DNA of 64,000 nt from the IMG/VR virus record IMGVR_UViG_3300020147_000065, positions 157,109 to 221,108 of that record; one strand, 5' to 3'. A program made the translations under genes and the position numbers. The notes below the pieces were generated by a model, which did not search any database, was not told the DNA's origin, and was given only the letters and a program-made list of their open reading frames with translations. Shown one piece after another: positions 2,496 through 62,871 of the stretch. How positions within the stretch are numbered: position 1 is the stretch's first letter; every line of letters starts with the position of its first letter.

Positions 2496-2772
2496 TTTTA
2501 CTTGCATTTGTTCTACTGGTAACAGCGCCCTTATTTATTGGCAAGCCTTATATTTTTTATGGTATCGTTATTCTGGTTGGTGTGCTTACCCTTTTAGGGT
2601 AGGCACATCGCCAGCGATGTGCCCCCCCCCTTGCATCACGATTGTAAAACTTCCTACTGGGGATCAAAATATGTGGAAGAAGGAAGGTCAGAAAATCAGG
2701 TCAAGAATAAAAAGATTTTTCACTTTGCCCCCCCCCCTTGTTGCCATCTTTATCATATGTAATAATTTAAGT

Positions 2773-3108
2773 ATGGAATTTAGCAACACGGACATCACCA
2801 AAGTTTTTGAGAACGTAAACGCTCCGGCTGTAAAGGCTCAGATTTCAACTCTTGGCGGTGCCGGTCGCCATAGTCTAATGATTACTATGTCATTGGACAA
2901 GCGCGAGGATTGGGTTGCTGGCATCCTTCACAATTCGCGCTATATGTTCTTTAGTTTATCACAGGGCGGTAAACTCGAACAATTCAACCGCGCCCACACA
3001 ATCGAGCCAAAGTTTCGCACTCGCACCGTTGGCAGTGTAGACGATGCCATTGCAAAGATTAACACATACATCGAAAAAGTTAAGGACGCCCCCGCTGCTG
3101 TCAAGTAG
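2773..3108 (+). CDS. hypothetical protein (leaderless)
   Basis: ATG 6 nt after the -10 of a C-tract promoter. Confidence 0.75.
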   Translation: MEFSNTDITKVFENVNAPAVKAQISTLGGAGRHSLMITMSLDKREDWVAGILHNSRYMFFSLSQGGKLEQFNRAHTIEPKFRTRTVGSVDDAIAKINTYIEKVKDAPAAVK

Positions 3109-3162
3109 CGGGGACGTGCCCCCCCCCCCTGCATCTTATTACAAATTTGATATACTCTGAAT

Positions 3163-3605
3163 ATGAAAATTCTTGTGGTGCATCATGTTGAAGAATCTTT
3201 TTGTGGTGACGAATGGCAACAAATGGATAATGCACAAAGTGTTGTCGCAAAATTTTACGTCATATCAACCGCACAAGTTATGATAAGATTATTCTGACCA
3301 CTATGGAGGCATCGAATAGTGGTTATCATGAACTCGATAAATATATCAGCGTGGTAGAAAATTGGTGGTTTGGTTATTCACCTGATGAAGTATCTGAATA
3401 TGATACCGAACCAATGGTTTATAATGAAGACCATGTTTATGAAGGTCACGAATGGCTGCGAGTTTATGACTGGATTAAAGAACTAAAAGGTCATCAAATT
3501 TCCGTTTGCGGTGGTTTTCGTAATGAGTGTTTCTTAGGTCTTACCTCTACACTTGACCATTTAGGTATCAAATATAAAACAATTGAGCAGTGCGTTTATG
3601 GTTGA
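3163..3605 (+). pseudogene. probably frameshifted gene, weakly isochorismatase-like
   Basis: Leaderless ATG 3163 (MKILVVHHVE) stops near 3297; a second frame continues KILRHINR...VCGGFRNEC to 3605. Confidence 0.45.
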
Positions 3606-3663
3606 TAACCATAAACGTGCCCCCCCCCCTTGTCGTGTCCCCGTGGTTTGTTAAAATAGAAGT

Positions 3664-3957
3664 ATGAATTTCTTACGCAACCCTCATTTTGTGGATTTTA
3701 TCATTGATTTCACACAATGCAAAGCAGACGAAAGCGAACGTTTTGCACTTGCTAAGGCTCAGGGTGTAGCCTTCGCAGACTGGCGAATGACCACCGACGC
3801 AGCCGACTTCGTTGTTGATTATTTCAACGCTTTACCCAAACAGGAACAGTTTCGGACGTTGGTTCGTGCCCGTCTCGATATGCGTCAACAGGCCGACGCA
3901 TTAAACGCAAGCGTTGCAGAGTTTACTCAGGTGATAAACGCAGCCCGGTCTATGTAG
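3664..3957 (+). CDS. hypothetical protein (leaderless)
   Basis: C-tract promoter; stop codon inside hairpin. Confidence 0.7.
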   Translation: MNFLRNPHFVDFIIDFTQCKADESERFALAKAQGVAFADWRMTTDAADFVVDYFNALPKQEQFRTLVRARLDMRQQADALNASVAEFTQVINAARSM

Positions 3958-4034
3958 ACCGGGCTTGCCCCCCCGCTTACAATCATTCTTTTTCGTGTTA
4001 TACTTGAATCAATTCAAGAGTTACGGAGAAAGCA

Positions 4035-4253
4035 ATGCGACACGCAAACCACGTAGTTTTACCAACGATCATCACTGAGACAGGAGATTATTTGACGCGC
4101 GGCGGTGAGGTCGTTAACATCACCTCGATTGTCCCTTACTCGGCTTATGGTGCTACCGGCACCTATCATTGTAATATCATAGACCATTGGGATGTTTCAG
4201 GTCGGCTTTATCCCAACATGATAAGTGATAATGATATTGTCGAACGGGTATAA
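4035..4253 (+). CDS. hypothetical protein
   Basis: GGAG RBS. Confidence 0.65.
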   Translation: MRHANHVVLPTIITETGDYLTRGGEVVNITSIVPYSAYGATGTYHCNIIDHWDVSGRLYPNMISDNDIVERV

Positions 4254-4360
4254 TGGACAGGGAACGAAAGTTCCCTGTCTGCCCCCCCCCCGCCGGCACC
4301 CCTTGCATTCTCCCCGTGGTTTGCTATACTCTCAGTATCTTTAGTTAGAGAGGTTACGAC

Positions 4361-4672
4361 ATGAACAACGATGTGAAGATTCGCGGAATCGAGACGCCCG
4401 AACTGTGCCTGTGCTGCGGCTGCCAGGCCGAAATCGAAATCACCACGCCTGATGGTGTGGAGAAAATGTGCTTTTCTGAGGCGTTGCGTCAGTATCCTGA
4501 CCATATGGCCGACTATGGCGAATCCATGTTTCGTGCTATGCAGGATGAGGCCGAAGTATTGGATGCGCAGTTGCAAGAGTTCCGCGCTGAGGCGTGGCAC
4601 GAAGAAAATACACCACCGGCATGGTTTATGGATGAGCCGAACCCTTATATGGGTATGGGCTGCGATTTTTAA
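4361..4672 (+). CDS. hypothetical acidic protein
   Basis: GAGG RBS, own promoter. Confidence 0.7.
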   Translation: MNNDVKIRGIETPELCLCCGCQAEIEITTPDGVEKMCFSEALRQYPDHMADYGESMFRAMQDEAEVLDAQLQEFRAEAWHEENTPPAWFMDEPNPYMGMGCDF

Positions 4673-4775
4673 AACCTGCGCACTTTCCTGTTGTTTGGGA
4701 AAGTGCTGCCCCCCCCCTTGCTCCCATCTTTCTTTTTGTTATACTTGTAGTATCTTAGTTAGAGAGGTTAGAGCA

Positions 4776-4994
4776 ATGACTGAAAGCTATAAGCAAGCCG
4801 CAGAATGGGCGCAACATGAGGCAGACGTAACCGGCGAACCGTTTGTCGTCGTTCGGATGCCCAACACAACCGCGTATGGTTGCGAAAGAATCAGCGATTA
4901 CGCAATGAAGATTCGCGGACGTGTCGCAGCAACAATTTATCTCGAAACGATTGTTCCGCAAGAGTGGCGGAAAGCAAGGAACGGTGAAAACTAA
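4776..4994 (+). CDS. hypothetical protein
   Basis: GAGG RBS; coupled to the next ORF. Confidence 0.6.
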   Translation: MTESYKQAAEWAQHEADVTGEPFVVVRMPNTTAYGCERISDYAMKIRGRVAATIYLETIVPQEWRKARNGEN

Positions 4995-5368
4995 TGGCTA
5001 TCTCACGCGGCGGTAAAATCCGCAATGGTTCCTATGACCATAAATCTTATGGCCGTCCTCAGTTCGGTGTTGGTGGTGGTAATCGTATTCTCACCAACGA
5101 TAACACGAAATGGGGAGAATGGAAACGGGGCCACAAATACTCCCTGCGTATTCAAGACGTATCGCAGCGCAAGAACGGGCAAGTTCATGTGCAAGTGAAA
5201 CCACACAAGGGCAACGGCGGCAGAGTCATTGAGAAAAAAGGTTTTGTGGAATTTTTAGACGGTGAACCACACATCACTGTAAATTGGCAGGGTAAACGCC
5301 TGACTATCGCTGAAATTCTCGCAATCGGCACACACTACGGAAATAAAGCGGCTCACTCTTCGGAGTGA
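4994..5368 (+). CDS. hypothetical protein
   Basis: TAATG overlap; UUCG hairpin at the stop. Confidence 0.7.
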   Translation: MAISRGGKIRNGSYDHKSYGRPQFGVGGGNRILTNDNTKWGEWKRGHKYSLRIQDVSQRKNGQVHVQVKPHKGNGGRVIEKKGFVEFLDGEPHITVNWQGKRLTIAEILAIGTHYGNKAAHSSE

Positions 5369-5840
5369 GCCTTGCCCCCCCCTTGCGCGATTTAAAGTTC
5401 TGCGTTATCCTTTATGTATCTTACGGAGGTTTATCATGTGTTCTGATTCTTTTGCGTCTGCTTGTGCTATTGCCGAAGAGAAATCAAAGGAAACACCAAA
5501 GTGTTTGCAGTGTGGTAAACCGATGGGGCCGGTTGAGGCCGCCATCAGCTCGACGTGTGGTAAATGTTGCCGTCTTAATCATCGTAAAGCGATGGGAAAA
5601 AATAATGCTCAGAAAAATTGCCTTTTGGCTTAATTACAATGATAAACGCGTCCCGCAATGGTTGCACAATCGCGTTTGTCGTGATCGTTGGACGTGTGAC
5701 GGGTGCTATCGTAAAATGGTGCCCCGTGGTGGAATGTATTTCGATAATGGCCCTTATTGTGGTCATTGCAACGGGAACTAATTAGTTCCCGTTGTGCCCC
5801 CCCCCTTGTGCTACTATTAATAGTGTGTAATAATTTAAGT

Positions 5841-6107
5841 ATGGCTAACCACTACGAACGCAATCGGACGTTTGCTCGGTTTCAACATAACGGAAAACAC
5901 TATACCATCCACGAGCGCAAACATAAACTCAGCGATGGAACATGGCACACAAGCCGTTTTATCTGTGATGCTGCCGGAGATTGGCAAGGATGGGCAAAAG
6001 GTGTAAAGGTTGCGCGTGAAGTGTTGGATGGCAAGCGCGATAAGCATACCGGCAAACTTCTTGACCCTGTCGCCGCAATTCACGAAGCTGTAGCAGCTCT
6101 CCCATAA
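5841..6107 (+). CDS. hypothetical protein (leaderless)
   Basis: C-tract promoter. Confidence 0.7.
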   Translation: MANHYERNRTFARFQHNGKHYTIHERKHKLSDGTWHTSRFICDAAGDWQGWAKGVKVAREVLDGKRDKHTGKLLDPVAAIHEAVAALP

Positions 6108-6187
6108 GGAGAGCTGCCCCCCCCCTTGCAGCTAACTACATTCTGAGGGATAATAGATATATCACCTTTAGTTACGGAGAGTTTATC

Positions 6188-6586
6188 ATGTCAGAAGTAA
6201 TCGCAAACGCCGACCTCGTGGGCCGCATCATGGAGATGGTGCAATGGGCCGTTGATAAAGATATGGGCATCCAAAAAGGTGCTTTTGGTCTTGTCATTCG
6301 CAATGGTCACTATGCCGTTGGCTCCTATGGCCACGTTTGCGCGTTGGGCGCGTGTATGCATGGTAAAGCTGTCACCGGCGGCAGTGTGCCCGATTCATTC
6401 GCAAAAGAATATGGTGTCACCGACACTTGGGCGTGGGAGTTTGCCTATGGGTTCGATAACCCGACTAATCCCTATGGCTACACGGTCACTGAGGCCGTAT
6501 TAACGGGCGCGGAAGTTCGCCGCCTATGCGATGAGCGCGGCATCGAAATAAAAGGCAGTCGAGACGTAAAAGACAAAGAGGATTAG
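6188..6586 (+). CDS. hypothetical protein
   Basis: GGAG RBS. Confidence 0.7.
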   Translation: MSEVIANADLVGRIMEMVQWAVDKDMGIQKGAFGLVIRNGHYAVGSYGHVCALGACMHGKAVTGGSVPDSFAKEYGVTDTWAWEFAYGFDNPTNPYGYTVTEAVLTGAEVRRLCDERGIEIKGSRDVKDKED

Positions 6587-7119
6587 CAACCCTCTGCCCC
6601 CCCCCTTGCTCTATTTACCATATTTGTTAGAATAGATATGTAAGTCCTGTAATCCGCAGTCCTGGGACATTAGGCAACCAACTTACCACGGGAGAATTAA
6701 ATGTCACTCAGAGAACGACCAATCCATCGCTATTCCTGCCTTGTTCGAATTCCCGGTTCTGCAATTGCTCATCGCTATTACTATGAGGATTACAATTCTC
6801 AAGGTGCGCGAGAAGCAATCAGACAGCAGGTAATCAATGCGTTTTCCCAAATTGATTCCCGTAAAATTAAAGTCAGCAAAGCTACAAGAGTCTAAGGATA
6901 AAATCATGCACAGATTTCGATTATTCAAAGACGGGGACATGTGGTGCGCGTTGACCGGGAGCAACATTCAAGAAGGGCGCGTTGGATTCGGAAAAACTCC
7001 ATCCGAAGCGGTTAAAAATTGGGAGAAGGACAAGCCCCTTCCATAGGGGCTTGTCGTTTTTAACCCCCCCTTGCGCTGATTCTCTACTTTGTTAAAATAT
7101 AAAGCGAGGAGAGAATTTC

Positions 7120-7359
7120 ATGCGTTATCCACTAATTTGTTTGCTGACTGCGTTTCTCGGATGGTTCCCAATGGCCGCGTTTGGTGTAGGGCTTTTCGTC
7201 CATGCGGTTATTCGTTCGGTTCAATTCTGGATGTATCCCACCGTGGGCGGTTTTCTGGTGACAGTCGTTTCGACTCTACTGATTGTCGCTTATATGAAAG
7301 TAACCGACCCCATCGCGGCATCGCTTTATAATCTGGAAACAGTAGCGAGTCTCTCTTGA
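7120..7359 (+). CDS. small membrane protein
   Basis: Two hydrophobic segments; AGGAG RBS. Confidence 0.65.
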   Translation: MRYPLICLLTAFLGWFPMAAFGVGLFVHAVIRSVQFWMYPTVGGFLVTVVSTLLIVAYMKVTDPIAASLYNLETVASLS

Positions 7360-7693
7360 GAGACTCGCCCCCCCCCCTTGCAGTTATTGAGCATCTGATA
7401 TAAAATATGTTATATGAAAAGTTTTTATGTTAAGCAGACAACAAGAAACTCCCGTCACGGAAGTTCAAGTTGGGGAACAGGTCACGTCTGCTCAACTTAT
7501 AGTGAACCAGTAGACTCCCTGTTTTTTGCAATTGTCCTTTATTTCGTCTATTTAATTACATTCGATACCGCGATCTGGAATTTGAGCATTAGATATGAAT
7601 GACGCCCCCCCCCCTTGGCAGTATTTAATTTCCGCAGTATAATCTAATTGTCGCTGAGAAATACGGCGAACAAAAAACAAGGTGAGGTTTACA

Positions 7694-7804
7694 ATGGGTG
7701 ATTTTCTTCTCGAAATGTTGGGCGAAGTGGACGAAGCGACGGTAGCGGCACAAGAGACACAATTAGCTGAAGTTGCGGAAACCAAAGACGCCGACGACGA
7801 CTAA
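7694..7804 (+). CDS. 36-aa acidic peptide MGDFLLEMLGEVDEATVAAQETQLAEVAETKDADDD
   Basis: GAGG RBS; similar to 8181..8312; too short for the ORF track. Confidence 0.65.
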   Translation: MGDFLLEMLGEVDEATVAAQETQLAEVAETKDADDD

Positions 7805-7938
7805 TTATAGTCACAAAGGGTAAAAACGATTCGCAATTATCGCGCGGGGGAATCCGAAAATTCTCCCGCTCCTTTGTGCCCCCCCCTTGCGTCAAGTGGT
7901 ATATTTGTTAAAATAAATGGTGAAAGTGAGGAAAACAA

Positions 7939-8079
7939 ATGGCTGCTTTGACTGATGAACAGAAGAAATTGGGTTGGGTCGAAGGCACTTCCGCAGAGTT
8001 TCTCGGACTCACACCCGAAGAAGAAGCTCAGGTGCTCGAAGAAATGGAAGGTAAACCAGAAGCAGAGGACTCGGAGTAA
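7939..8079 (+). CDS. 46-aa peptide resembling the N-terminus of XRE/HigA-type antitoxins
   Basis: MAALTDEQKKLGWVEGTSAEFLGLTPEEEAQVLEE...; GAGG RBS. Confidence 0.55.
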   Translation: MAALTDEQKKLGWVEGTSAEFLGLTPEEEAQVLEEMEGKPEAEDSE

Positions 8080-8180
8080 TCCGGGGACTCTGCCCCCCCC
8101 CTTGCGCAATATCTCAAAGAAGTTAAAATATATTATGTCAGTCAGCAATGACGACAAATCAAATCTTTGGAGAAGAAACC

Positions 8181-8312
8181 ATGTCCATGCTCGATTTTTT
8201 GGCCGATATGCTCGGCGGGGAAGCCACGATGAACGATGTCCAGGCCCAGGAAGCCGCTGTCCTTGCGGCTGCGCGAGAAAAAGACGCCGAAGATTACGAC
8301 GACGAGGATTAG
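8181..8312 (+). CDS. 43-aa acidic peptide MSMLDFLADMLGGEATMNDVQAQEAAVLAAAREKDAEDYDDED
   Basis: GGAG RBS; paralog of 7694..7804. Confidence 0.65.
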   Translation: MSMLDFLADMLGGEATMNDVQAQEAAVLAAAREKDAEDYDDED

Positions 8313-8682
8313 TTTATCACTAATCAGGGAAAGGGAAAGTCCGAAAGACTTTCCCTTTTCTTTTTTGTCTGCCCCCCCCCCTACCATCCCACTGATAAAA
8401 TCTCCCCGTGGGTGGCGATCATATGGAAGATGGAAGGCCAGTGAACCATGTCAAAAATAAAATCGAGAATCACTTTCACCTCCCCCTTGCAGCCATTGTC
8501 ACACCTTGTTAAAATTTAAGGTATGAAATGGCCCAAGATAATTATCACCACGCGGAAGTATATCTACGGTATCCAATCACAAACCCATTGTCAATGGTTG
8601 GTGATGTGCATAAACAGCATCTAAGGGAGTAGATGCTGCCCCCCCCCTTGCAGCACTTTCATAAATTGCGTATAATTTAATT

Positions 8683-8950
8683 GTGAGCGGCGGAGTGAGT
8701 AAGCAATAGGGCAGTGAGGTTGAGAGAGTAACGTATACGGCGCGGTGATGAGTGCGGAGCCAATCGGACATCGAGATGAGCAACTCCAAACAATACTCTA
8801 AGGCTATGGAACGAGGAAATCAAGATACATATACCTGCTGAGGCCCAAAGCTCCAACGTGAGCGTTTTCATAACAAGCAAAGATGCTGCGTAAGAAATTC
8901 CGCCCCGTGCGGTGAGATTCAAAGGCCACGAATCCTATATGCGTGGTATC
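8683..8950 (+). ncRNA. putative structured ncRNA module A
   Basis: C-tract promoter with no + strand ORF; GGCGGAGT(8689)/ATTCCGCC(8897) closing helix. Confidence 0.45.
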
Positions 8951-8999
8951 TTTGCCCCCCCCCCTTGCTCTATAATCCTTATCTGTTAAAATAGATTAT

Positions 9000-9233
9000 A
9001 TGAATTGCACAATCTGTGGAAAACCTGTCGTATTGGTGCCATCGGCTGAACATAGAGCCGCTAAAGATTGCACAGGTAAAACCGCTGCTTATTATCGTAG
9101 TTTGTTCACTACCCACGCGGATTGTGAACTCAAAAAGCGGCGCGAGGAATCATTGCCGCGTCCTCTCACAGATTTAGAACGTGTGCAGTATGCCGGTCGT
9201 GGTATCAATTTACCAAATAAAATAATCATATGA
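9000..9233 (+). CDS. small Cys/His protein
   Basis: CxxC...HxxC; leaderless. Confidence 0.7.
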   Translation: MNCTICGKPVVLVPSAEHRAAKDCTGKTAAYYRSLFTTHADCELKKRREESLPRPLTDLERVQYAGRGINLPNKIII

Positions 9234-9592
9234 CAAGAGTTTGGCGAGTAGAGAACTATCAAGGCTCCAGCCCGTTTGTGGAGCCTTATTTCGCTAATAA
9301 GCCACCCACGGGGTTACAGGTTGACCGACGTGATGATTTTGCTCATGTTAAAGAGTCCCTACCGTGGCGACGTGTTCGCTTCGGTATGACGACGCGTGAA
9401 AATCTCATCGAATGGTTTGGTTTCTCATTAGTGAAAGAGTTCTACAAAGAGGGTTATCGAATAGTTACCTATATTGTAGACGATAGATACGTGATGCACT
9501 CTAAGAGTCGTTATCAGTTAATGTTTGATTTAGACCACGCGAGATTAGATTATGAGGTAGAAGAAAATCAACTAATGTCAGTATGGCCTTAA
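9230..9592 (+). CDS. hypothetical protein
   Basis: ATGA overlap with the upstream gene. Confidence 0.7.
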   Translation: MTRVWRVENYQGSSPFVEPYFANKPPTGLQVDRRDDFAHVKESLPWRRVRFGMTTRENLIEWFGFSLVKEFYKEGYRIVTYIVDDRYVMHSKSRYQLMFDLDHARLDYEVEENQLMSVWP

Positions 9593-9640
9593 TGCCCCCC
9601 CCCCTTGACGTTCATCCCCGTGGATTGTAAAATAATTAAC

Positions 9641-9979: not shown

Positions 9980-10031
9980 GTAGTTGCCCCCCCCCCTTGT
10001 CAACAGAAATTATATGGATTAAAATATAAGC

Positions 10032-10715: not shown

Positions 10716-10765
10716 GCCTTGCCCCCCCCCTTGCTCTATGAAGTATTTATGGTAGAATATATTAC

Positions 10766-11155: not shown

Positions 11156-11206
11156 CAGCCTTGCCCCCCCCCTTGTGAACCTGCCCCGTGGTTGGTAAAA
11201 TATAAA

Positions 11207-53231: not shown

Positions 53232-53236
53232 TTTTC

Positions 53237-53326: not shown

Positions 53327-53330
53327 ATTC

Positions 53331-55774: not shown

Positions 55775-56503
55775 TTAGATGGCGAGAGATGTTAAGGCAT
55801 CTCTCGCCTCTTCTGGTGTAGAAAATCCGGTCTTTGCGTATCTTATTCCGTTAATTTTCTTTGCATATAACCATTTATCTCTCTTGTTATAATACACATT
55901 CGGATAAACATGTTGCTTTTTAACAGGAAGAGAAAAACCATCTTTTATTTCTTTCATGTAATTTTCTCGATTACTTGGAAAATTTAATCTTGCTTCTTTA
56001 CCGTAAAGTAATAGTGCTAATTTATCATAATGTTCTGCGGCTTCTTCCTCTGATAAGAAATCACAACGATAATATTCTTTTCCGTTTTTATCTCTTATAA
56101 ATGCTCTCCATTTTTCACTGGATGCATTATGTAAACAAACCCCCACATATCTTTTATTTGAGTTTTTCTTTACTCCTTGTTGACTGGTGGTAGAATTACC
56201 AAAACGAACATCTGCTGGGTTTCTAATTAAGTTATATCCGAATCTTCTGTCCCAAGACTTTAGCTCATTTATCCAGAAATACTCTCTGTCTTTTGCTTTA
56301 TCAAAATCTACAGTTTCTATAGGCTCAATCATAAAATTGTTTATACCATGAGAAGCCATTGCTTTATGTATAATTGTCTTAGCTCTATGACGAGCAAAAC
56401 TTTTGTGACCATTAAATCTAATATTAATTGGTTGGGTTGTTGAACCAATATAAATTTTCCCATTGAGTAGATTTGTGATCTTGTAGATATTGATCTGTTT
56501 CAT
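55775..56503 (-). CDS. GIY-YIG homing endonuclease with AP2 domains
   Basis: IYKITNLLNGKIYIGST; YVGV...WRAFI...EEEAAEHYD...LNFP. Confidence 0.9.
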   Translation of the reverse strand: MKQINIYKITNLLNGKIYIGSTTQPINIRFNGHKSFARHRAKTIIHKAMASHGINNFMIEPIETVDFDKAKDREYFWINELKSWDRRFGYNLIRNPADVRFGNSTTSQQGVKKNSNKRYVGVCLHNASSEKWRAFIRDKNGKEYYRCDFLSEEEAAEHYDKLALLLYGKEARLNFPSNRENYMKEIKDGFSLPVKKQHVYPNVYYNKRDKWLYAKKINGIRYAKTGFSTPEEARDALTSLAI

Positions 56504-56573
56504 ATAAATCCATACGGTTTACACTTGACATTGGTTCCGAAGTTTAGTAAAATAGTATATACAGGAGAAGAAA

Positions 56574-57887
56574 ATGCCACAAATAATTGATGAAGCGCGT
56601 CTGATATGTGCTAAATTCAAAGACGGGAAGTTAGTACATAATAAATTTTACAACATGACATTATACGACGACAACCGAGTGCGAATTTGGTATGGGCGAT
56701 ATGTTGAGGATGGCAGCGGTGGACTGAAAACACAGAGCGACGAAACGGTTCCTGGCGGTCGCGCTTTGTTTGATTCAAAATATCGTGAAAAGACCGGCCC
56801 AAGAAAAGGTTACAAGCCGCTCCCAGTCGTAGCGAACACAACTTCAGATAGTAAAATAGTTGTGGCTAAAGGCACACTTGCTGAGATTGCAGCAAAGCAA
56901 ATCAAGACTAACTCCGATGAAGTGTTTATGCTTATCAAACATCTCGCAGATGTTAATGTGCATCAAATTACTTCACAAACCTCTATCAAGTATGACGCAG
57001 CAACGGGTAGCTTTTCAACACCTTATGGTCTTGTTACTTCTAATGGTATTGATAAGGGGCGGACACTTTTAGGTGAGATTCATAGTCTGCTAACCACGGG
57101 CACCTTCGATAAGCGTTTTGAGACACTTGTTGAAGAATATATGACAATCATTCCACAAAGTGTTGGTCGCCGTTCAATCGGCCCGAAAGAAGTCTTTCCT
57201 AATCTTGATAAAGTCAAGTCACAAAACGACGTGCTTGATGCTCTTGAAGCATCTTTAACCGAGGCCAATAAACCTAAGAAGGAAGAAAAGAGCGACGAAG
57301 CGCAGGAAGTTGAGAAGTTGTTCGACTGCGTATTAGAGATTGTCACAGACCCCGCAGAATATAACCGCGTGGAAAGCCTTTATACTTCTTCTCGTAAAGA
57401 AATGCACGTAGCAGCACGTTTAAAACTACGTAAGGTTTACCGTGTTGTTATTAACCACATGACGCAAGCCTACAATAACCGTAAGGTTAAAGGTAATGAG
57501 CAAGAGTTATGGCATGGAACATCACCGGCTAACGTGCTTTCGATTCTTAAATCAGGCTTCATGATTTCGCCGCCTTCAACGGCGGCAATCGCGGGTAAAA
57601 ACTTTGGTTACGGTGTTTATTTCGCTAATGCCTCAACCAAGAGTTTAAACTACGCACACGGTTATTGGTCAGGCACTTATGCTCGGAAATGCTTCTTGTT
57701 TTTAAACAACGTGGCTCTTGGTAACTATTATGTTCCTGAGAACACCACGCGAAGCAATCCACCAAAAGGCTACGATTCATACTGGGCACAGGCGGGTAAA
57801 TCCTCCTGGTTACAGAATGATGAGATTGTGATTTTCGACACAACTCAGATTGAGCCTACTTACTTGCTGGAATTTGAGGACAACTAA
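56574..57887 (+). CDS. PARP-like ADP-ribosyltransferase (WGR + helical + catalytic)
   Basis: NKFY..WYGR; LWHGT; FGYGVYFA; NDEIVIF (H-Y-E triad). Confidence 0.92.
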   Translation: MPQIIDEARLICAKFKDGKLVHNKFYNMTLYDDNRVRIWYGRYVEDGSGGLKTQSDETVPGGRALFDSKYREKTGPRKGYKPLPVVANTTSDSKIVVAKGTLAEIAAKQIKTNSDEVFMLIKHLADVNVHQITSQTSIKYDAATGSFSTPYGLVTSNGIDKGRTLLGEIHSLLTTGTFDKRFETLVEEYMTIIPQSVGRRSIGPKEVFPNLDKVKSQNDVLDALEASLTEANKPKKEEKSDEAQEVEKLFDCVLEIVTDPAEYNRVESLYTSSRKEMHVAARLKLRKVYRVVINHMTQAYNNRKVKGNEQELWHGTSPANVLSILKSGFMISPPSTAAIAGKNFGYGVYFANASTKSLNYAHGYWSGTYARKCFLFLNNVALGNYYVPENTTRSNPPKGYDSYWAQAGKSSWLQNDEIVIFDTTQIEPTYLLEFEDN

Positions 57888-57952
57888 CCTTCGGGTTAGT
57901 TGTCTGCCCCCCCCCCTTGGCAACGACTCCATAATACTATATAATTTATTCC

Positions 57953-59077
57953 ATGAGCACAGAATATCACCATCCAGACGACAAAGCACTTATGGATTTA
58001 CAGGCAGGGGAAATCAAGATTATCAAACCTGATGAACCTCCCTTCTTAGTTGAACTCGATGAACTTGAAAGAGCAGCCGAACCCTTCTTTTTCGATATGA
58101 AATTCATCTTTCCTTACCAACATCACTTGAATGATGTTGAGGGACATATATTAGGGATTCAATACGATGGAGTTACCATTGCAAAATTCCAACAAGTTCA
58201 TGGTGGATTCTTTCGCCTCGCATGGACTAACGACCAACGACAGGAAGATATTCCGTGGGAAGTTCACGGTCTTTGTGTTGGCTGTGTAATCAGTTTCGAC
58301 CAACTTCTATTTGCAGTGAAATGGGCTTCATTCGCTAACAAATTGAAGTATAAACGCGGAACACGTTTCCTTAGTGATGGTGACGTGAAAAATCAATTAA
58401 ATAATCCAGAAAAGGGGTTGACACCACCCACGGAAAGTGGTAAAATAAATGGTGTTAAAGGAGAAAATATGTGTTTGGTAAATCCTCTGCAAAATGATGT
58501 GCAGACAGTTGTGAACGAGTTTGTTTCTCAGGGTAAATCTTTTACCGCTTTCGATGTGACCGTAGAAGTAGGCAACCGTGTAGGAATGAAGGTGCCTCAT
58601 CGCTACGTGAAGCCAGAGGTTGTCAATGCTCTGGAAACGCTACCCACGGGGTATGATGTGCGAATCCGCACCGACATTAACGGACAACCGCGCGAGTGGT
58701 ATAAGACGCAACCGGCAGCAGTAGCTACTCCGGCAACCGCTGCTGTTAAAGCGCCCGTGGCAAGCACAAATGTTGGTGTCGCAAAGAATGAAGATGGCAC
58801 TCGCCTTCGCGTTTTTCGTGACGCCCTTGAATCCGTTGGCTTCAAACCAGGTGAGAAAGTTCGTGCTGTATTCTCGCCTTCCATGAAAGCAGTATTTGTC
58901 ATTCCGACAACTTCTGTGTTTTCAACCAATGACCCTGACAAGAAGGATGCAGAGTATTCTGTGGACGTTCGACAGAATCTTCGCCTTCAACTGTCAACAC
59001 TTGGAATCCCTTCTGCCTCACAGGTAAGCGGTGTTTCTAAGGTTCAAGATAAAGTTTTGCAAATTTCTTTGCAATAA
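57953..59077 (+). CDS. hypothetical protein; probable internal gene start at 58469
   Basis: Internal TTGACA/TAAAAT promoter at ~58418 and AAGGAG RBS in frame. Confidence 0.65.
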   Translation: MSTEYHHPDDKALMDLQAGEIKIIKPDEPPFLVELDELERAAEPFFFDMKFIFPYQHHLNDVEGHILGIQYDGVTIAKFQQVHGGFFRLAWTNDQRQEDIPWEVHGLCVGCVISFDQLLFAVKWASFANKLKYKRGTRFLSDGDVKNQLNNPEKGLTPPTESGKINGVKGENMCLVNPLQNDVQTVVNEFVSQGKSFTAFDVTVEVGNRVGMKVPHRYVKPEVVNALETLPTGYDVRIRTDINGQPREWYKTQPAAVATPATAAVKAPVASTNVGVAKNEDGTRLRVFRDALESVGFKPGEKVRAVFSPSMKAVFVIPTTSVFSTNDPDKKDAEYSVDVRQNLRLQLSTLGIPSASQVSGVSKVQDKVLQISLQ

Positions 59078-59141
59078 CCCCTTGACAAACTTGCAGGAAC
59101 CACGTATAATATCTTACGTGCTAATGCATACATGATAAAAA

Positions 59142-59215
59142 GCTAAGACGTATGCGACAGGTAAAGCAGCTAAAAGCGGTGTGTTTTGCGGGTTCGATTC
59201 CCGCCGTCTTAGTCA
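59142..59215 (+). ncRNA. tRNA-like unit lacking a normal anticodon arm
   Basis: CTAAGACG/CGTCTTAG acceptor-like stem plus GCGGG-TTCGATT-CCCGC T-arm. Confidence 0.55.
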
Positions 59216-59216
59216 T

Positions 59217-59279
59217 AAGGTTCTAACAGCAAACAATCAAAATTGTTTACCATTTAATCAAACAAATCAAATGAACCTT
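59217..59279 (+). ncRNA. ACAGCAA-stem RNA copy 4
   Basis: AAGGTTC-TA-ACAGCAA...GAACCTT. Confidence 0.7.
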
Positions 59280-59285
59280 GAATTT

Positions 59286-59353
59286 AGGGGAGTAGCTCAC
59301 CGTTAGAGCGTCCGTCTGGAAGGTAGCAGGTTAAATTCCTGCCTCCCCTACCA
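59286..59353 (+). ncRNA. tRNA-like unit with truncated anticodon arm and CCA end
   Basis: AGGGGAG/CTCCCCT-ACCA; D and T arms intact; anticodon arm only TCC-GTCT-GGA. Confidence 0.7.
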
Positions 59354-59354
59354 A

Positions 59355-59455
59355 AAGATAGTTACAGCAATCTTTACAGCATAGCTTAATGGATAAGCAA
59401 AAGTCTTCAAAACTTTAGATTGCGGGTTCGACTCCCGCTGCAATAAAACTATCTT
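59355..59455 (+). ncRNA. ACAGCAA-stem RNA copy 5 carrying an acceptor-less tRNA(UCA) mimic
   Basis: AAGATAGTT/AACTATCTT stem; D-arm, AAAGT-CTTCAAA-ACTTT and T-arm inside. Confidence 0.75.
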
Positions 59456-59461
59456 GTAAAT

Positions 59462-59542
59462 TGGGATGAAGTTCTGAGGTGTTCGGAATATAGGCTCTCC
59501 GCGGAGTCGAAGGGGTAGGTTAAACTCCTACCGTCCCAGCCA
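59462..59542 (+). ncRNA. tRNA-like unit with 6-nt anticodon loop and CCA end
   Basis: TGGGATG/CGTCCCA-GCCA; GGCTC-TCCGCG-GAGTC. Confidence 0.6.
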
Positions 59543-59543
59543 A

Positions 59544-59613
59544 AAGGTCGAGACAGCAACTTAAAACGCATTTCACTGTTAATGAACGACGACGGGTTCG
59601 ACTCCCCTTACCA
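59544..59613 (+). ncRNA. ACAGCAA RNA copy 6 with the 3' part of a tRNA-Asn(GTT)-like unit
   Basis: AAGGTCG-AG-ACAGCAA, TTCA-CTGTTAA-TGAA, GGG-TTCGACT-CCC, ACCA; closing strand not found. Confidence 0.5.
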
Positions 59614-59665
59614 CCCCTTGACAACCCCCCGCGGTTAGTAGTATAATTACTTTGGTTTTGAAAGA

Positions 59666-59699
59666 AAGGTGCGAACAACAACAATACCAATAGCACCTT
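59666..59699 (+). promoter_or_regulatory. ACA(A)CAA-stem copy 7 in the 5' UTR, abutting the RBS of the DUF2828 gene
   Basis: AAGGTGC-GA-ACAACAA...GCACCTT-GGAGG-AATTATG. Confidence 0.65.
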
Positions 59700-59708
59700 G
59701 GAGGAATT

Positions 59709-61190
59709 ATGGCACGAATGAATAGCCTTGTGGCTGCGCTCAACACGACTGTAACTGAGAAGGGCGCTCTCACCAACCGCTCAAGCGGTTCTGCAATGTT
59801 GGATTTCTACGGACAGATGGGCGCTATGCGCGGTCAGTCTGACTCCAACGTAAACTCTACGTTCTCCGCGGCTTTTGCTGCTGAGCGAGCACTTGCTCTC
59901 CGTTCTCTCTTCTATCTCCGTGACGTTCGCGGTGGTAAGGGTGAGCGAAAGACCTTCCGCACCATCCTTGATTGGTTGGTAAAGAATGACCCACAGGTTG
60001 TAATCAATAACCTCGATAACATCTCGTTCTATGGTCGTTACGACGACCTTGCCCGTTTGATTAACTGCGGAAACACTAAGGTGAAGAACGCAGTGGTCGC
60101 AAAGGTCAAGGCTCAGCTTGCGGCTGACAAGAACGACGAACACCCTTCGCTCTTGGCTAAGTGGATGCCCTCCATTAACGCCTCGTCCACAGAGTCTAAG
60201 TCTCTGGCGAAGAAGTGGATTCGTGCTCTCGGTATGTCCGAGGCCGAATATCGTAAGACTCTTTCTGCGCTTCGTGCTCAGATTAAGGTTGTCGAGCGTT
60301 ATATGTGCGCCCGTGATTGGGATTCGATTAACTTCGAGCACGTCCCATCGAACGCTGCAAAGCTGTATCGTAAGGCGTTTAAGACCCGCGCACCTGAGCG
60401 TTACTCTGAGTATCTCGGTGCCGTAGAGAAGGGTGAGAAGACCATCAAGGCTTCTACTCTTTACCCCTACGACCTCGTTCGTCCTTACTTGAAGGCCGGT
60501 GGCTATTACGGTGGACGTGTAAGCGTTGACCGCACTATCGAAGCACAGTGGAAGGCTCTGCCTAACTACCTCGCTGACGATGACACCGACTTCTTGGTAA
60601 TCGCGGACACTTCGGGTTCGATGTTCGACCACTCGTTGGATTTCTTGCCCATCTGCGTATCAGTGTCTTTGGCACTATACTCGGCTGAGCGTAACCGTGG
60701 AGCCTTCAAGGGCTTCTGGATGAACTTCTCAACTTCTCCTACTTTCCAGCAGGTTCGTGGTGAGACTTTGGCTGACAAGATTAGCAACATGGACTACTCT
60801 AACTGGTGTGGTTCTACCAACGTTGACAAGGCTTTCGAGTTGATTCTTTCTCGCGCTCGCGCGGCGAATGTTCCAGCCGACGAAATGCCTAAGATGTTGA
60901 TGGTCATTAGTGATATGCAGTTTGACGGTCACTGCACCGTGACGAACCTTGAGACTTGGAAGAAGAAGTTCGCAACCTACGGTTACGAGGCTCCAACCAT
61001 CGTCTTCTGGAACGTAAACGCACGTCCTGGCCAGTCGCCAATTACTGTAAACGACAAGGGTGTAATGCTTGTTAGCGGTGCGTCCGCAGAGACATTCCGC
61101 GCTGTCCTTTCCGGTAAGAACTTGTCGGCTTACGACGCAATGGTTAATACTCTCAGCAATGAGCGTTACGACCGTGTTGTTGTAGACTAA
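59709..61190 (+). CDS. DUF2828 / TROVE-like vWA domain protein (Ro60-like architecture)
   Basis: TEKGA..SSG..LDF; LFYLRDVRGGKGER; LAKWMPS; LYPYDLV; ADTSGSM; SDMQFD; FWNV. Confidence 0.9.
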   Translation: MARMNSLVAALNTTVTEKGALTNRSSGSAMLDFYGQMGAMRGQSDSNVNSTFSAAFAAERALALRSLFYLRDVRGGKGERKTFRTILDWLVKNDPQVVINNLDNISFYGRYDDLARLINCGNTKVKNAVVAKVKAQLAADKNDEHPSLLAKWMPSINASSTESKSLAKKWIRALGMSEAEYRKTLSALRAQIKVVERYMCARDWDSINFEHVPSNAAKLYRKAFKTRAPERYSEYLGAVEKGEKTIKASTLYPYDLVRPYLKAGGYYGGRVSVDRTIEAQWKALPNYLADDDTDFLVIADTSGSMFDHSLDFLPICVSVSLALYSAERNRGAFKGFWMNFSTSPTFQQVRGETLADKISNMDYSNWCGSTNVDKAFELILSRARAANVPADEMPKMLMVISDMQFDGHCTVTNLETWKKKFATYGYEAPTIVFWNVNARPGQSPITVNDKGVMLVSGASAETFRAVLSGKNLSAYDAMVNTLSNERYDRVVVD

Positions 61191-61207
61191 TCCGGTGTTG
61201 GGCGGGG

Positions 61208-61242
61208 AAAGGGGCAGCTTTCGGGCTGCCCCTTTTCTTTTT
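61208..61242 (+). terminator. intrinsic terminator
   Basis: GGGGCAGC-TTTCGG-GCTGCCCC followed by a T-tract. Confidence 0.8.
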
Positions 61243-61316
61243 GTGATCCTGCCCCCCCCCCTTGCACTAAGTCACCAAAGACGGTATAATTTATTACATG
61301 AGAGGGAGACACTATA

Positions 61317-61661
61317 ATGCACAACGATCAAGAACCGCAGAATGCTCAAGAAACCAGAGTGCATCTCGAATCGGCTAAAAAGCGAGTAGAGCAACTCGAA
61401 GCCCGGCTTCGGGGCTTCGAGCAGAGATGTAACAACGGAAATCATAATTGGGGTCAACCTAAGTATGATCCAATTCATCACGAAGCTTATACTAGTCCCG
61501 GCGACCGGCCCGGCACAATGGGTGTAGACTGGCGAGGCCCAACATACGTCCCTGCTCGAACAGAAGACAGATGGGTTCGAGAATGCCGCGACTGTGGACT
61601 CAAACAAACAACAAAGTATTCGACCAAGAAAGTTACTGAAACCAAGATACCGAGCTTCTAA
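61317..61661 (+). CDS. hypothetical protein
   Basis: GGAG RBS; C..H.W...W.RECRDCG. Confidence 0.7.
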   Translation: MHNDQEPQNAQETRVHLESAKKRVEQLEARLRGFEQRCNNGNHNWGQPKYDPIHHEAYTSPGDRPGTMGVDWRGPTYVPARTEDRWVRECRDCGLKQTTKYSTKKVTETKIPSF

Positions 61662-61987
61662 TGGAACTATGGGAAATTTTAGTCCCCACAGAAATGGAGC
61701 GGGACGGGCTTGTAAAGCCCATCAAAACGCGGTATCATAAGGTGTGGGATTCCAAGGTTCGAGAGATCGCCGGAGGATTAACAATTTCCCCTCCGCATAA
61801 AGGTCAGTGGTTATCCCCCAGTGGTGAGCTATTCGCAGAGCGAATGATTCCAGTGAGGATAGCTTGTACAGAAGAACAGATGGAGAAGATAATGGACTTC
61901 ACCATGACCTACTATAACCAACTTGCAGTGTTAGCATATAGAGTATCGGATAAGGTATTATATAAAGAGAAAGGAGCTATAAAATGA
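61661..61987 (+). CDS. conserved phage hypothetical protein
   Basis: TAATG coupling; GGLTI...GQW.SP.GE...ERMIPVRI. Confidence 0.75.
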   Translation: MELWEILVPTEMERDGLVKPIKTRYHKVWDSKVREIAGGLTISPPHKGQWLSPSGELFAERMIPVRIACTEEQMEKIMDFTMTYYNQLAVLAYRVSDKVLYKEKGAIK

Positions 61988-62463
61988 AAGCTATCCACGG
62001 GTGTTATTACGTCCATCGGTCTGCATGGACACAATTACCAAACAAAGCGGCAATCGTAAGCGCATGGCAACAGACACCTTTTGATTTTATATTTGAGATG
62101 ATTAAATATAACTCTGTTACTGGAGCTGTTACGTTTTCAGAATGTCATGATTGGGACACCGCGTGGGAACCGACACAAGGCGATTCATGGTTAATCCGTT
62201 CCGATGGTAGCACGAAGTTCATAAAACAACCGAAAGACCCTTTCGTTTATCATCACAAACATCTGTTTGTTGATTCAACATATACAGGCTTTGATATAGA
62301 CAAAAGCAAAGCCCGTTCTGAAGCAATGTCAGAGGTTATATTGAAACTCGATAAACCCTACATTGGCCGTAAGTCGTGGTGGGAGACTTTACTGGGAGCC
62401 GAAGTCTGGCGAAATAAAAAGCCCGTAAAAGTCCGTGAAATACTTGACGCCGCTACTCAGTAG
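61984..62463 (+). CDS. hypothetical protein resembling the accessory domain of DNA-phosphorothioation-associated methyltransferases
   Basis: YVHRSA...D.A.EP...YHHKHLFV..Y (recognised by eye). Confidence 0.5.
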   Translation: MKAIHGCYYVHRSAWTQLPNKAAIVSAWQQTPFDFIFEMIKYNSVTGAVTFSECHDWDTAWEPTQGDSWLIRSDGSTKFIKQPKDPFVYHHKHLFVDSTYTGFDIDKSKARSEAMSEVILKLDKPYIGRKSWWETLLGAEVWRNKKPVKVREILDAATQ

Positions 62464-62489
62464 TGGTAAAATATATTGTGAGGAAAATA

Positions 62490-62786
62490 ATGATACGAAC
62501 AAACACAAACACAGGCGCATTTGTCGCCCGATTCAATCACGAATCACCAAACGAACAGCACCGTGGCAAGTCCACCTTTGAACTGGAACAAGAGTTCGGT
62601 GAAGGTAACGCTCTCCAACTCTCCAAAGTAGAAGTAAATGTCCATGAAGGCGACCAGTTCTGTCGTCGAACAGGCCGACGAATCGCTTTCCGTCATGCGA
62701 TGCGAACGCTACGGCACAACAAAGTGCTTGGCCGACCAGAGCGAAAAGCTATTGGTGATGCCATTCGACAGAAAGTTAAGTTGTAA
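62490..62786 (+). CDS. hypothetical protein
   Basis: DQFCRRTGRRIAF motif; GAGG RBS. Confidence 0.7.
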   Translation: MIRTNTNTGAFVARFNHESPNEQHRGKSTFELEQEFGEGNALQLSKVEVNVHEGDQFCRRTGRRIAFRHAMRTLRHNKVLGRPERKAIGDAIRQKVKL

Positions 62787-62871
62787 GGAAAAAGGGCACC
62801 TTTCGGGGTGCCCTTTTCTGCGCTGCCCCCCCCCCTTGCAGGTATCTAACTTCTAAGGTATAATATATTCC

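What the first reader, a model, noticed from the sequence alone, without database searches (positions are those of the whole stretch)
2727..62860. Two promoter classes: C-tract promoters have a degenerate -35, tract-less promoters have TTGACA
Seen: after C-tracts the -35 is mostly TTGCAC, TTGCTC, TTGCAG, TTGTCA or TTGCGC. Promoters with no tract (e.g. ~34834, 36641, 45000, 46441, 47114, 47955, 50691, 52752, 56525, 59082) are TTGACA. Inference: the C-tract at about -36 to -46, where an AT-rich UP element normally sits, compensates as a site for an activator or modified sigma (MotA-box-like logic). Slippage in tract length could tune individual genes.
Basis: partly seen in the sequence, partly recalled or inferred. 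Interest (0 to 1): 0.7.

Follow-up and report, generated by a model that had tools for sequence, protein, structure and literature searches.

The report
C-run cassette promoters in a phage
In a new 221-kb soil phage, about 85 small accessory genes each start behind the same junction (hairpin, run of 7-11 C, promoter with only half a -35 box, leaderless start), while tRNAs and core genes use ordinary consensus promoters. The two classes are real, but what reads the C run is not known.

Summary
The phage genome has 98 C runs of 7 or more bases and no A or T run of 8 or more. TTG directly abuts 75 of these runs, followed by a 16-18 bp spacer and a TAtAAT box. When promoters are picked by their -10 region alone, exact TTGACA occurs in 0 of 68 run promoters and 25 of 50 run-less ones (p = 5e-12).

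"Degenerate" is imprecise. Position 4 of the -35 box is C or T, with A depleted; positions 5 and 6 are free.

An invariant TG precedes the run. A stable hairpin ends 0-4 nt before the run in 72 of 75 cases. ATG lies 6-7 nt after the -10 box, which implies leaderless mRNAs.

The elements are junctions of single-gene cassettes, mostly ORFans. They resemble the PeSL terminator/promoter cassettes of T4-type phages. Two related metagenomic lineages keep the run fused to TTG: C4AC3 in one, C13-16 in the other.

The run also occurs at divergent junctions and after canonical terminators, so it most likely acts on DNA as part of the promoter. MotA-like activation and tuning by slippage remain unproven. 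There are no MotA or AsiA homologues. Run length varies between samples but does not track any promoter feature. No RNA data exist.

The parts
2728..36010 (+). Array of about 70 single-gene cassettes. Each junction reads: hairpin, TG, C7-11, TTG(C/T)nn, 16-18 bp, TAtAAT, 6-7 nt, ATG.
24542..24561 (+). Example junction: 8-bp hairpin with a TTCG loop that ends the upstream paralog's transcript, followed by a 4-nt linker ending in TG.
24566..24575 (+). Example junction: C10 run, about -37 to -46 of the next promoter (this one has an 18-bp spacer). It is C11 in a re-assembly of the source run.
24576..24615 (+). Example junction: -35 TTGCAC (24576-81), 18-bp spacer, -10 TATAAT (24600-05), 7 nt, ATG at 24613 (leaderless start of gene 24613-25029).
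20760..25029 (+). Eight tandem genes. The seven tested (21635-25029) are paralogs at 36-56% aa identity. All eight carry a C run (C8-11) and promoter, and the seven folded junctions also have the hairpin.
34834..34872 (+). Example run-less promoter: cTTGACA, 17 bp, TAAAAT, 7 nt, ATG (GP88 gene 34870-35559).
44900..53330 (+). tRNA cluster served by run-less cTTGAC(A/G) promoters (-35 at 45000, 46441, 47115, 47955, 48616, 49979, 50691, 52753). One run promoter lies inside it at 49662.
53425..62872 (+). Mixed region. Run promoters at 53425, 54241, 57907, 61252, 62826. Run-less promoters before the ligase (-35 at 54569), PARP (56525), a suppressor-type tRNA (59082) and the DUF2828 gene (59618).
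40025..40034 (-). Run promoter on the minus strand (a G run on +). Others lie at 40763-40772 and 42944-42952.
18241..18248 (+). C8 run at a divergent junction. A minus-strand promoter lies on its other side, so no co-directional upstream gene and no separate hairpin.
20712..20722 (+). C11 run at a second divergent junction, lying between two back-to-back promoters.
61190..61300 (+). Canonical terminator (hairpin plus T run), then TG-C10-TTGCAC promoter. The orthologous junction is C4AC3 in L190 and C4 in L191.
628..637 (+). Orphan TG-C run with no promoter abutting it. Other orphans: 922-929, 1637-1646, 2023-2030, 2622-2630, 4282-4291, 8372-8381, 17335-17344, 20424-20430, 38662-38671. Two similar runs have a cTTGACA promoter only 4-10 nt downstream (14823-14831, 63875-63884).
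39074..39580 (-). 168-aa protein with two sub-threshold helix-turn-helix matches, expressed from a run-less leaderless promoter. It is only a candidate regulator.

Best explanation
The C runs are the middle piece of a three-part junction between single-gene cassettes in the hyperplastic early region of a novel phage of about 221 kb. Part 1 is a stable hairpin, usually without a T run, that closes the upstream transcript as an attenuator and 3' protector. Part 2 is TG plus 7-11 C, covering about -36 to -47 of the next promoter. Part 3 is a primary-sigma-type promoter with only a half -35 box (TTG plus a pyrimidine), a strong -10 box, and an ATG placed so that transcription starts on its A (leaderless mRNA). 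The run most likely works on the DNA as a -35-proximal promoter element. It stands in for the missing ACA half of the -35 box and for an UP element, giving these promoters their own mode of recognition by the host polymerase, with or without a helper protein. Core genes and tRNAs use ordinary cTTGAC(A/G)-17-TAtAAT promoters instead. Shown here: the anatomy, the statistics, conservation in relatives, and maintenance by selection. Inferred: the start sites, hairpin function, action at the DNA level, and the compensation itself.
For: The run and a full -35 box are mutually exclusive (0/68 against 25/50 exact TTGACA). Position 4 is selected for C/T rather than drifting. The run abuts TTG with no gap in 75 cases here. 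It also does so in two relatives: L190 at 73% aa identity and L191-193 at 53%. This holds even though run length (C4AC3, C13-16) and the 5' flank (TG or CA) differ. Runs are present at two divergent junctions (18241, 20712), where neither neighbouring promoter transcribes them. Runs are also present just after canonical hairpin-plus-T-run terminators (7064, 7879, 54241, 61252, 62826; L191:3216), where a role in termination would be redundant. Run-less promoters directly follow stop codons without any run (59082, 54569), so the run goes with promoter type, not with gene ends. Short C runs (3-5) accompany the few TTGC-type promoters elsewhere in the genome, and 30 of 32 consensus promoters have C at -36. 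Spacers and upstream flanks are unrelated in sequence (0.32 and 0.27 pairwise identity against 0.28 and 0.25 when shuffled). Paralogs at 36-56% aa identity keep the module, so it is held by selection rather than recent copying. Both classes share the -10 box, discriminator and ATG spacing.
Against: There are no transcript data, so start sites, strengths and timing are all inferred. Fourteen runs have no abutting promoter, several of them at ends of gene arrays (17335, 38662), so TG-C(n) may have a function of its own. The hairpin ends 0-4 nt before the run in 72 of 75 cases, and the run stays unpaired. That looks like a two-part RNA signal and is not needed by a pure DNA model. In the L191 lineage the three run promoters have near-consensus -35 boxes (TTGACG, TTGACT, TTGTCG), so the complementarity is not seen there (n = 3). 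C runs upstream of -35 boxes are not generally enriched in phage promoters, and G8 is commoner than C8 in IMG/VR. The host is unknown, and no run-binding protein has been identified.
Confidence: 0.5

Rival explanations
1. The run is the site of a phage-encoded, injected or host activator, or of a sigma-remodelling pair. The run class would then be a separately timed (delayed) class, switched on by a product of the consensus-promoter class.
For: TG plus the run is centred near -41.5, the class II activator position. A at position 4 and full TTGACA are avoided, as expected if these promoters must be off without the factor. A double helix-turn-helix protein (39074-39580) and an ECF-like sigma (genome about 35.5-36.0 kb) are each preceded by a run-less consensus-type promoter.
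Against: No MotA, AsiA or KH-domain homologue is found. TTG remains at -35 with a 17-bp spacer, unlike MotA boxes at -30. Run genes are ORFans of the kind that are immediate-early in T4-type phages, while the consensus class serves tRNAs, ligase and replication genes. Run length varies from 7 to 16 across promoters and lineages, which is awkward for a sequence-specific site of fixed size. The helix-turn-helix hits are below threshold.
Confidence: 0.22
2. The signal works in RNA. Hairpin plus unpaired C run would be a factor-dependent terminator or processing site. One example is a core Rho loading site, with the hairpin protecting the trimmed 3' end. This would keep every leaderless gene monocistronic, and the fusion to the next promoter would only reflect compaction.
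For: The hairpin ends 0-4 nt before the run in 72 of 75 cases. Mean folding energy is -18.0 against -10.9 kcal/mol for shuffles, and the run Cs are less paired than in shuffles. Most junctions lack a T run. Orphan runs sit at gene ends, including the ends of arrays. Internal cistrons without a Shine-Dalgarno sequence would be untranslated on read-through RNA. Poly(C) is the classical Rho ligand (my own knowledge).
Against: The run is present at divergent junctions where it is not transcribed, and after canonical terminators. It is absent from junctions that have consensus promoters. The exact zero-gap contact with TTG, kept in two lineages, is not required by this model. Ten C are far shorter than known Rho loading sites. 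An rC:dG hybrid opposes intrinsic termination (my own knowledge).
Confidence: 0.15
3. The run has no direct regulatory role. With TTG and the -10 block it would serve as shared microhomology that lets cassettes recombine, duplicate and be lost (PeSL-style shuffling). The -35 difference would then reflect the separate ancestry of mobile cassette promoters and resident core promoters.
For: The run class is tied to ORFan cassettes and a tandem paralog array; the consensus class is tied to conserved genes. There is a cassette indel exactly at the 61252 junction between the window and L190. PeSLs in T4-type phages mediate such shuffling (PMC2839356).
Against: Positions 5 and 6 and the spacers are fully randomised, yet position 4 and the run are kept, even among paralogs at 36-56% identity. 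This points to selection on the motif itself. Microhomology does not explain the avoidance of A at position 4, nor the minimum run length of 7.
Confidence: 0.1
4. The runs are sequencing or assembly artefacts.
For: Run lengths differ by 1-3 bases between assemblies.
Against: There are 98 runs with fixed flanks, oriented with the genes. They are found in an independent assembler's contigs, in a second soil sample and in two other lineages from other projects.
Confidence: 0.01

Closest known systems
PeSL (promoter-early stem-loop) composite terminator/promoter cassettes of T4-type phages (PMC2839356, PMC4122927)
   Same: Repeated intergenic modules in hyperplastic regions, each combining a stem-loop with a sigma-70-type early promoter. 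They flank small ORFans, one per gene, and are linked to cassette indels. RB49 stem-loops are made of poly-G and poly-C. nt-1/KVP40 PeSL promoters have the -35 consensus TTGYVH, like the TTG(C/T)nn seen here.
   Different: Here a separate, unpaired run of 7-11 C lies between the hairpin and the -35 box, where PeSLs have an AT-rich upstream region. Starts are leaderless rather than Shine-Dalgarno-led. Hairpin sequences are all different. The phage is not T4-like: its terminase and polymerase are only remotely related to those of any cultured phage.
Homopolymer tracts next to the -35 box acting as rheostats (H. pylori sabA T-tract, PMC4081817)
   Same: A slippage-prone homopolymer directly upstream of the -35 box. 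It lies outside the -35/-10 spacer, and its length varies in populations.
   Different: [quoted passage not shown] Here no AT-rich UP-like partner exists upstream. The tract is C, not T or A. About 85 promoters in one genome carry it, and run length shows no correlation with any promoter feature.
T4 middle promoters (MotA box with AsiA sigma appropriation)
   Same: A good -10 box combined with a non-consensus upstream element, in a phage that also has consensus promoters.
   Different: The MotA box (TGCTT) is centred at -30 and replaces the -35 box. Here TTG stays at -35 with a 17-bp spacer. No MotA or AsiA homologues are found.
UP element / alpha-CTD proximal subsite
   Same: Same position, about -38 to -46.
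   Different: UP elements are A/T-rich with a narrow minor groove; a C·G run is the opposite.
Phase-variable poly-C/poly-G promoter tracts of Bordetella fim and Neisseria opc/porA (my own knowledge; PMC1891110 was seen by title and abstract only)
   Same: Poly-C runs of similar length inside promoter regions that are prone to slippage.
   Different: There the tract sets the distance between the -10 box and the activator site or -35 box, giving on/off switching. Here the spacing between the -35 and -10 boxes does not depend on the run.

Membership tests
Primary-sigma (sigma-70-type) promoter | -10 TATAAT-like hexamer with invariant A at position 2 and T at position 6 | tested here: met
   Among 75 run promoters, T 69, A 75, t 41, A 68, A 66, T 75. 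The consensus class has the same box.
Primary-sigma (sigma-70-type) promoter | -35 TTGACA-like hexamer 16-18 bp upstream of the -10 box | tested here: met
   Run-less class: cTTGAC(A/G), with a 17-bp spacer in 32 of 32. Run class: only TTG plus a pyrimidine is kept, with a 17-bp spacer in 60 of 75.
Primary-sigma (sigma-70-type) promoter | Transcripts start 6-8 nt after the -10 box | not testable with these tools
   No RNA run was listed.
Leaderless mRNA genes | Start codon at the transcript's 5' end | tested here: inconclusive
   ATG lies 5-8 nt after the -10 box in 59 of 75 run promoters (7 nt in 35, 6 nt in 23), mostly preceded by a pyrimidine. In the -10-ascertained sets the figures are 53 of 68 run and 15 of 32 consensus promoters. 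Chance would give about 6%. Start sites have not been mapped.
PeSL composite terminator/promoter cassette | Stem-loop plus early promoter in one repeated intergenic module | tested here: met
   A hairpin ends 0-4 nt before the run in 72 of 75 cases. Upstream folding energy is -10 kcal/mol or lower in 63 of 75.
PeSL composite terminator/promoter cassette | Concentrated in hyperplastic regions and flanking ORFans | tested here: met
   Of 20 run-driven proteins scanned have no Pfam match at E 0.01 or below. Genes are 40-270 aa, one per promoter.
PeSL composite terminator/promoter cassette | Recombination between modules produces cassette indels or mini-circles | tested here: inconclusive
   One cassette indel lies at the orthologous 61252 junction compared with L190. 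There are too few relatives to judge.
PeSL composite terminator/promoter cassette | Stem-loop terminates transcription | not testable with these tools
   Most hairpins lack a T run.
T4-type middle (MotA/AsiA) promoter | MotA box centred at -30 in place of the -35 box | tested here: not met
   TTG sits at the -35 position with a 16-18 bp spacer.
T4-type middle (MotA/AsiA) promoter | motA and asiA genes in the phage | tested here: not met
   PF09114 and PF09010 give no match in any of the six frames.
UP element | A/T-rich sequence from -40 to -60 | tested here: not met
   The region holds a C run, then a GC-rich hairpin, with no A/T enrichment.
Phase-variable (contingency) promoter repeat | Repeat length polymorphic within or between populations | tested here: inconclusive
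   Contig-end overlap: C11 against C10. Re-assembly of the source run: +1 C at 2 of about 30 runs. Second soil sample: +1 C and -2 C, with no other differences listed. L191-193: 14/14/15, 13/16 and 13/16. Only contigs were available, not reads, so sequencing error is not excluded.
Phase-variable (contingency) promoter repeat | Length change alters promoter geometry or output | tested here: not met
   The run lies outside the -35/-10 spacer. Its length does not correlate with the spacer, the -10 score or the -35 score. Output itself cannot be tested here.
Intrinsic (Rho-independent) terminator | GC-rich hairpin followed by a U run | tested here: not met
   The hairpin is present, but it is followed by C, not T, at most junctions. 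Only about 8 junctions have a T run.
Integron attC cassette array | Conserved attC core sites and a tyrosine integrase | tested here: not met
   The hairpins share no sequence. There is no PF00589 match.

The most novel reading that the evidence does not exclude
A homopolymeric C·G run fused to a TTG half-site defines a new promoter class. It would be read by an unknown phage or host factor, or by an unusual host sigma or alpha contact. Because the runs are hypermutable, about 85 accessory genes of a virus would behave as contingency loci whose expression differs from virion to virion. The hairpin plus C run might also be a new kind of factor-dependent terminator and insulator.
Probability: 0.2. 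Interest if true: 0.8.

Novelty: new variant of a known kind. Interest (0 to 1): 0.6.

Why it matters
If the run substitutes for half of the -35 box, it is a simple new rule for reading promoters in uncultured phages, and possibly in their hosts. One genome supplies about 85 natural variants of the rule. The phage also expresses most of its accessory genes as predicted leaderless, single-gene transcripts from PeSL-like cassettes. That extends the cassette-shuffling model well beyond T4-type phages. If run length proves to vary in reads, it would be a rare case of contingency-type repeats in a virus. For annotation, the motif marks gene starts precisely in this clade.

Tried and rejected
- **IMG/VR pattern scans for the run promoter.** They gave only single hits in unrelated contigs. 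Relatives were found through proteins instead.
- **G8 control scan.** C runs upstream of -35 boxes are not a general phage feature.
- **Protein routes to relatives.** The ligase in IMG/VR gave nothing. GP88 in JGI metagenomes gave only marine phages at 50% identity or less, without runs. Two contigs of the closest relative (JGI 3300045391) could not be served as DNA, although one has the same 48-53 nt gene spacing.
- **Cultured relatives.** None are close. The polymerase is at most 37% identical, the terminase at most 26%, and rIIA at most 31%. Arthrobacter phage Racecar shares only a tRNA and has no runs. The host remains unknown.
- **DNA base-modification idea.** No TGT/DpdA and no thymidylate-synthase-like gene was found.
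- **Run pairing with upstream G.** Rejected, because the run Cs are less paired than in shuffles.
- **Integron-like array.** Rejected.
- **ECF-like phage sigma as reader of run promoters.** Unlikely, since both classes share a housekeeping-type -10 box.
- **Late-promoter motif.** A search by eye in crude upstream sets found nothing clear.
- **RNA runs.** None was listed.
- **Complex prediction.** I did not run one for the helix-turn-helix candidate, because the specificity of such models for DNA is too weak to decide anything.

Full report
**Source.** The window is the last 64 kb of a 221,108-bp IMG/VR phage contig. The contig's two ends overlap by 187 bp, and the only difference in the overlap is C11 against C10 in a C run. 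The genome is therefore probably complete and circularly permuted or terminally redundant, at about 220.9 kb. It encodes rIIA, a DnaB-type helicase, ribonucleotide reductase, a DNA polymerase and a very divergent terminase. No cultured phage is close. It comes from a soil metagenome. The host is unknown.

**The observation.** The window has 88 C runs of 7 or more bases on the + strand and 3 on the minus strand. Genome-wide there are 98 such runs, against no A or T run of 8 or more. Eighty-four are followed by a promoter at canonical spacing. In 75 of these, TTG abuts the run directly.

I therefore re-ascertained promoters from a matrix of the -10 and discriminator region alone.
- Exact TTGACA is 0/68 with a run and 25/50 without (p = 5e-12).
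- A at position 4 is 2/68 against 34/50 (p = 4e-15).
- A reversed-sequence control gave TTG in 7 of 169 hits.
- The C run before TTG is bimodal in length, 0-5 or 7-11.

The run class is not simply degenerate. Position 4 is C 64% or T 25%, with A depleted (p = 5e-8), whereas positions 5 and 6 carry no information.

- The run is preceded by an almost invariant TG: T in 72 of 75 and G in 74 of 75.
- A stable hairpin (8-12 bp stem, mostly four-base loops such as GAAA or TTCG) ends 0-4 nt before the run in 72 of 75 cases. The TG is often the last pair of the stem.
- Mean folding energy of the 45 nt upstream plus the run is -18.0 against -10.9 kcal/mol for shuffles (p = 4e-13). The run itself is paired less than in shuffles.
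- The stop codon of the upstream gene lies 2-14 nt before the run, often inside the hairpin. Alternatively it lies before a hairpin in a 26-61 nt gap.
- Only about eight junctions have a canonical hairpin plus T run.
- Run-less promoters have no systematic hairpin: -8.3 against -6.4 kcal/mol.
- In 59 of 75 run promoters an ATG opening a real ORF lies 5-8 nt after the -10 box, 6 or 7 nt in 58 of them, mostly behind a pyrimidine. This predicts transcripts that begin on the A of ATG. The remaining genes have leaders with GGAG-type ribosome sites.
- The genes are small, with a median of 112 aa, and there is one per promoter. Of the 20 products scanned have no Pfam match. Known domains among run-driven genes are two HNH nucleases, a Macro domain and one GP88 copy.

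**What it resembles.** This is the layout of the PeSL composite terminator/promoter cassettes that fill the hyperplastic regions of T4-type phages and mediate ORFan shuffling (PMC2839356, PMC4122927). In RB49 the stem-loops are made of poly-G and poly-C. In nt-1/KVP40 the PeSL -35 consensus is TTGYVH. What is new here is a separate unpaired C run in place of the AT-rich upstream region, the leaderless starts, and the strict split from a second promoter class.

The second class, cTTGAC(A/G)-17-TAtAAT, is the phage's ordinary promoter. It serves the tRNA cluster of 36 tRNAs, the ligase, the PARP gene, a GP88 copy and both rII genes. It is found all over the rest of the genome, sometimes with TTGACA in the loop of a terminator hairpin.

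**Selection and relatives.**
- Spacers and upstream flanks of run promoters are unrelated to each other: 0.32 and 0.27 pairwise identity against 0.28 and 0.25 for shuffles.
- Seven tandem paralogs at 36-56% aa identity each keep the hairpin, a C8-10 run, TTG and the leaderless start. The module is therefore maintained by selection, not recently copied.
- Pattern scans of IMG/VR found no other contig with many such promoters. Homologues of the DUF2828 protein led to two related lineages.
- L190 (73% aa identity) has, at the orthologous junction, a canonical terminator and then TG, CCCCACCC, TTGCCG, 17 bp, TATAAT, 7 nt and ATG.
- L191-193 (53% identity, with ligase, PARP and DUF2828 in the same order) have three promoters of the form CA, C13-16, TTG, 17 bp, -10 box, 6 nt, ATG, plus one orphan run.
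- At the junction after DUF2828 the run is C10, C4AC3 and C4 in the three lineages, always with a non-consensus -35 box.
- More distant DUF2828 phages have no runs.

**DNA or RNA?** Four observations favour a role on DNA as part of the promoter:
- the zero-gap fusion to TTG in all three lineages, despite different run lengths and 5' flanks;
- runs at two divergent junctions (18241, 20712), where neither neighbouring promoter transcribes them;
- runs directly after canonical terminators;
- junctions with consensus promoters that carry no run at all.

Three observations favour an additional or alternative role. The hairpin is tightly adjacent. The run stays unpaired. There are also 14 orphan runs, several of them at the ends of gene arrays.

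I therefore rank the explanations as follows:
1. A -35-proximal promoter element, with a hairpin attenuator in front of it.
3. An RNA-level terminator or Rho-type signal.
4. Mere recombination microhomology.

No MotA, AsiA or KH-domain protein is found. The phage does encode an ECF-like sigma, preceded by a run-less consensus-type promoter. There is also a 168-aa protein with two weak helix-turn-helix matches. However, both promoter classes share the same -10 box, so the same sigma region 2 should read both.

Run length shows no correlation with the spacer, the -10 score or the -35 score. Lengths do differ between data sets:
- by 1 at the contig overlap;
- by +1 at 2 of about 30 runs in a re-assembly of the source run;
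- by +1 and -2 in a second soil sample, with no other differences listed;
- by up to 3 among three samples of the L191 lineage.

Only contigs, not reads, were available, so true heterogeneity and homopolymer error cannot be separated. No RNA run was listed.

**Verdict.** The feature is a new variant of PeSL-type cassette junctions, with an unexplained C-run element.

Noticed in passing
whole genome; in the window e.g. 3640, 9617, 11185, 20040, 25080, 27469, 37258, 47964, 52762: The motif CCCGTGG-N3-G(C) occurs 137 times in the 221-kb genome, against about 15 expected for the 7-mer. It is found in both orientations, in all reading frames, and is evenly spread. At least a dozen copies lie in the -35/-10 spacers of both promoter classes at variable register, and several others are followed 4-6 nt later by TAnnnT. 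It is absent from the relatives' loci. Its function is unknown; an operator, a Chi-like site and a modification site are all possible.
   Followed up: partly
window 41022-41417 (-): A phage-encoded tmRNA (Rfam RF00023, 89 bits) that ARAGORN missed. By my own reading of the alignment, the tag reading frame is unusually long (about 26 codons) and ends in LAA.
   Followed up: partly
window 51818-51890 and 59374-59447 (+): Two suppressor-type tRNAs, with anticodons CTA (amber) and TCA (opal), among the 36 tRNAs. The second appears to have its own consensus promoter at 59082. Early genes use all three stop codons normally.
   Followed up: no
window 54605-63447: A module for ADP-ribosylation and nucleic-acid repair: an ATP-dependent DNA ligase, a eukaryote-like PARP (WGR, regulatory and catalytic domains), a DUF2828/DUF7788 protein and a Macro-domain protein. 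Ligase, PARP and DUF2828 are syntenic in L191, and PARP and DUF2828 recur in more distant large phages (L194, L196).
   Followed up: partly
window 5406, 13213, 15647, 18272, 25093, 25440, 34234 (-10 boxes): Seven run promoters share an odd -10 box, TATCCT, followed by TTA. This may be a sub-class within the run class.
   Followed up: no
genome 1-187 and 220922-221108 (window 63814-64000): The contig ends overlap by 187 bp, so the record that IMG/VR calls linear and 89% complete is probably a complete genome.
   Followed up: yes
genome about 35515-36033 (-), outside the window: An ECF-like sigma factor of 172 aa (regions 2 and 4), preceded by a run-less TTGACG promoter. It is presumably for late genes. 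No late-promoter motif was found by eye.
   Followed up: partly
window 48609-48628; genome about 43.5 kb and 67.8 kb: Compact composites in which TTGACA (or TTGAC) forms the loop of a GC-rich hairpin. This is a terminator-like stem overlapping the -35 box of the next promoter.
   Followed up: no
L032, L041, L052 (IMGVR_UViG_3300021255_002928): An unrelated 60-kb viral contig carries three copies of a promoter with a T run, then C9, then TTG, 17-18 bp and a -10 box. This may be an independent case of a C run fused to a -35 box.
   Followed up: no
IMG/VR scan, loci L081-L160: G8 directly upstream of TTG(N19-21)TANAAT gave 108 hits. Of the 80 fetched, 65 have TTGAC and 59 have TATAAT. G runs before consensus promoters are therefore commoner than C runs in viral contigs, for reasons unknown.
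   Followed up: no
window 2023-2070, 2622-2665, 8372-8415: Three orphan C runs precede small ORFs with similar N-termini (MEEGK, MWKKEG, MEDGR). Two of the three are followed by CACGATT, and at 2023 this forms a CACGATT / AATCGTG hairpin. These genes lack a normal -35/-10 pair, so this small set may be controlled differently.
   Followed up: no
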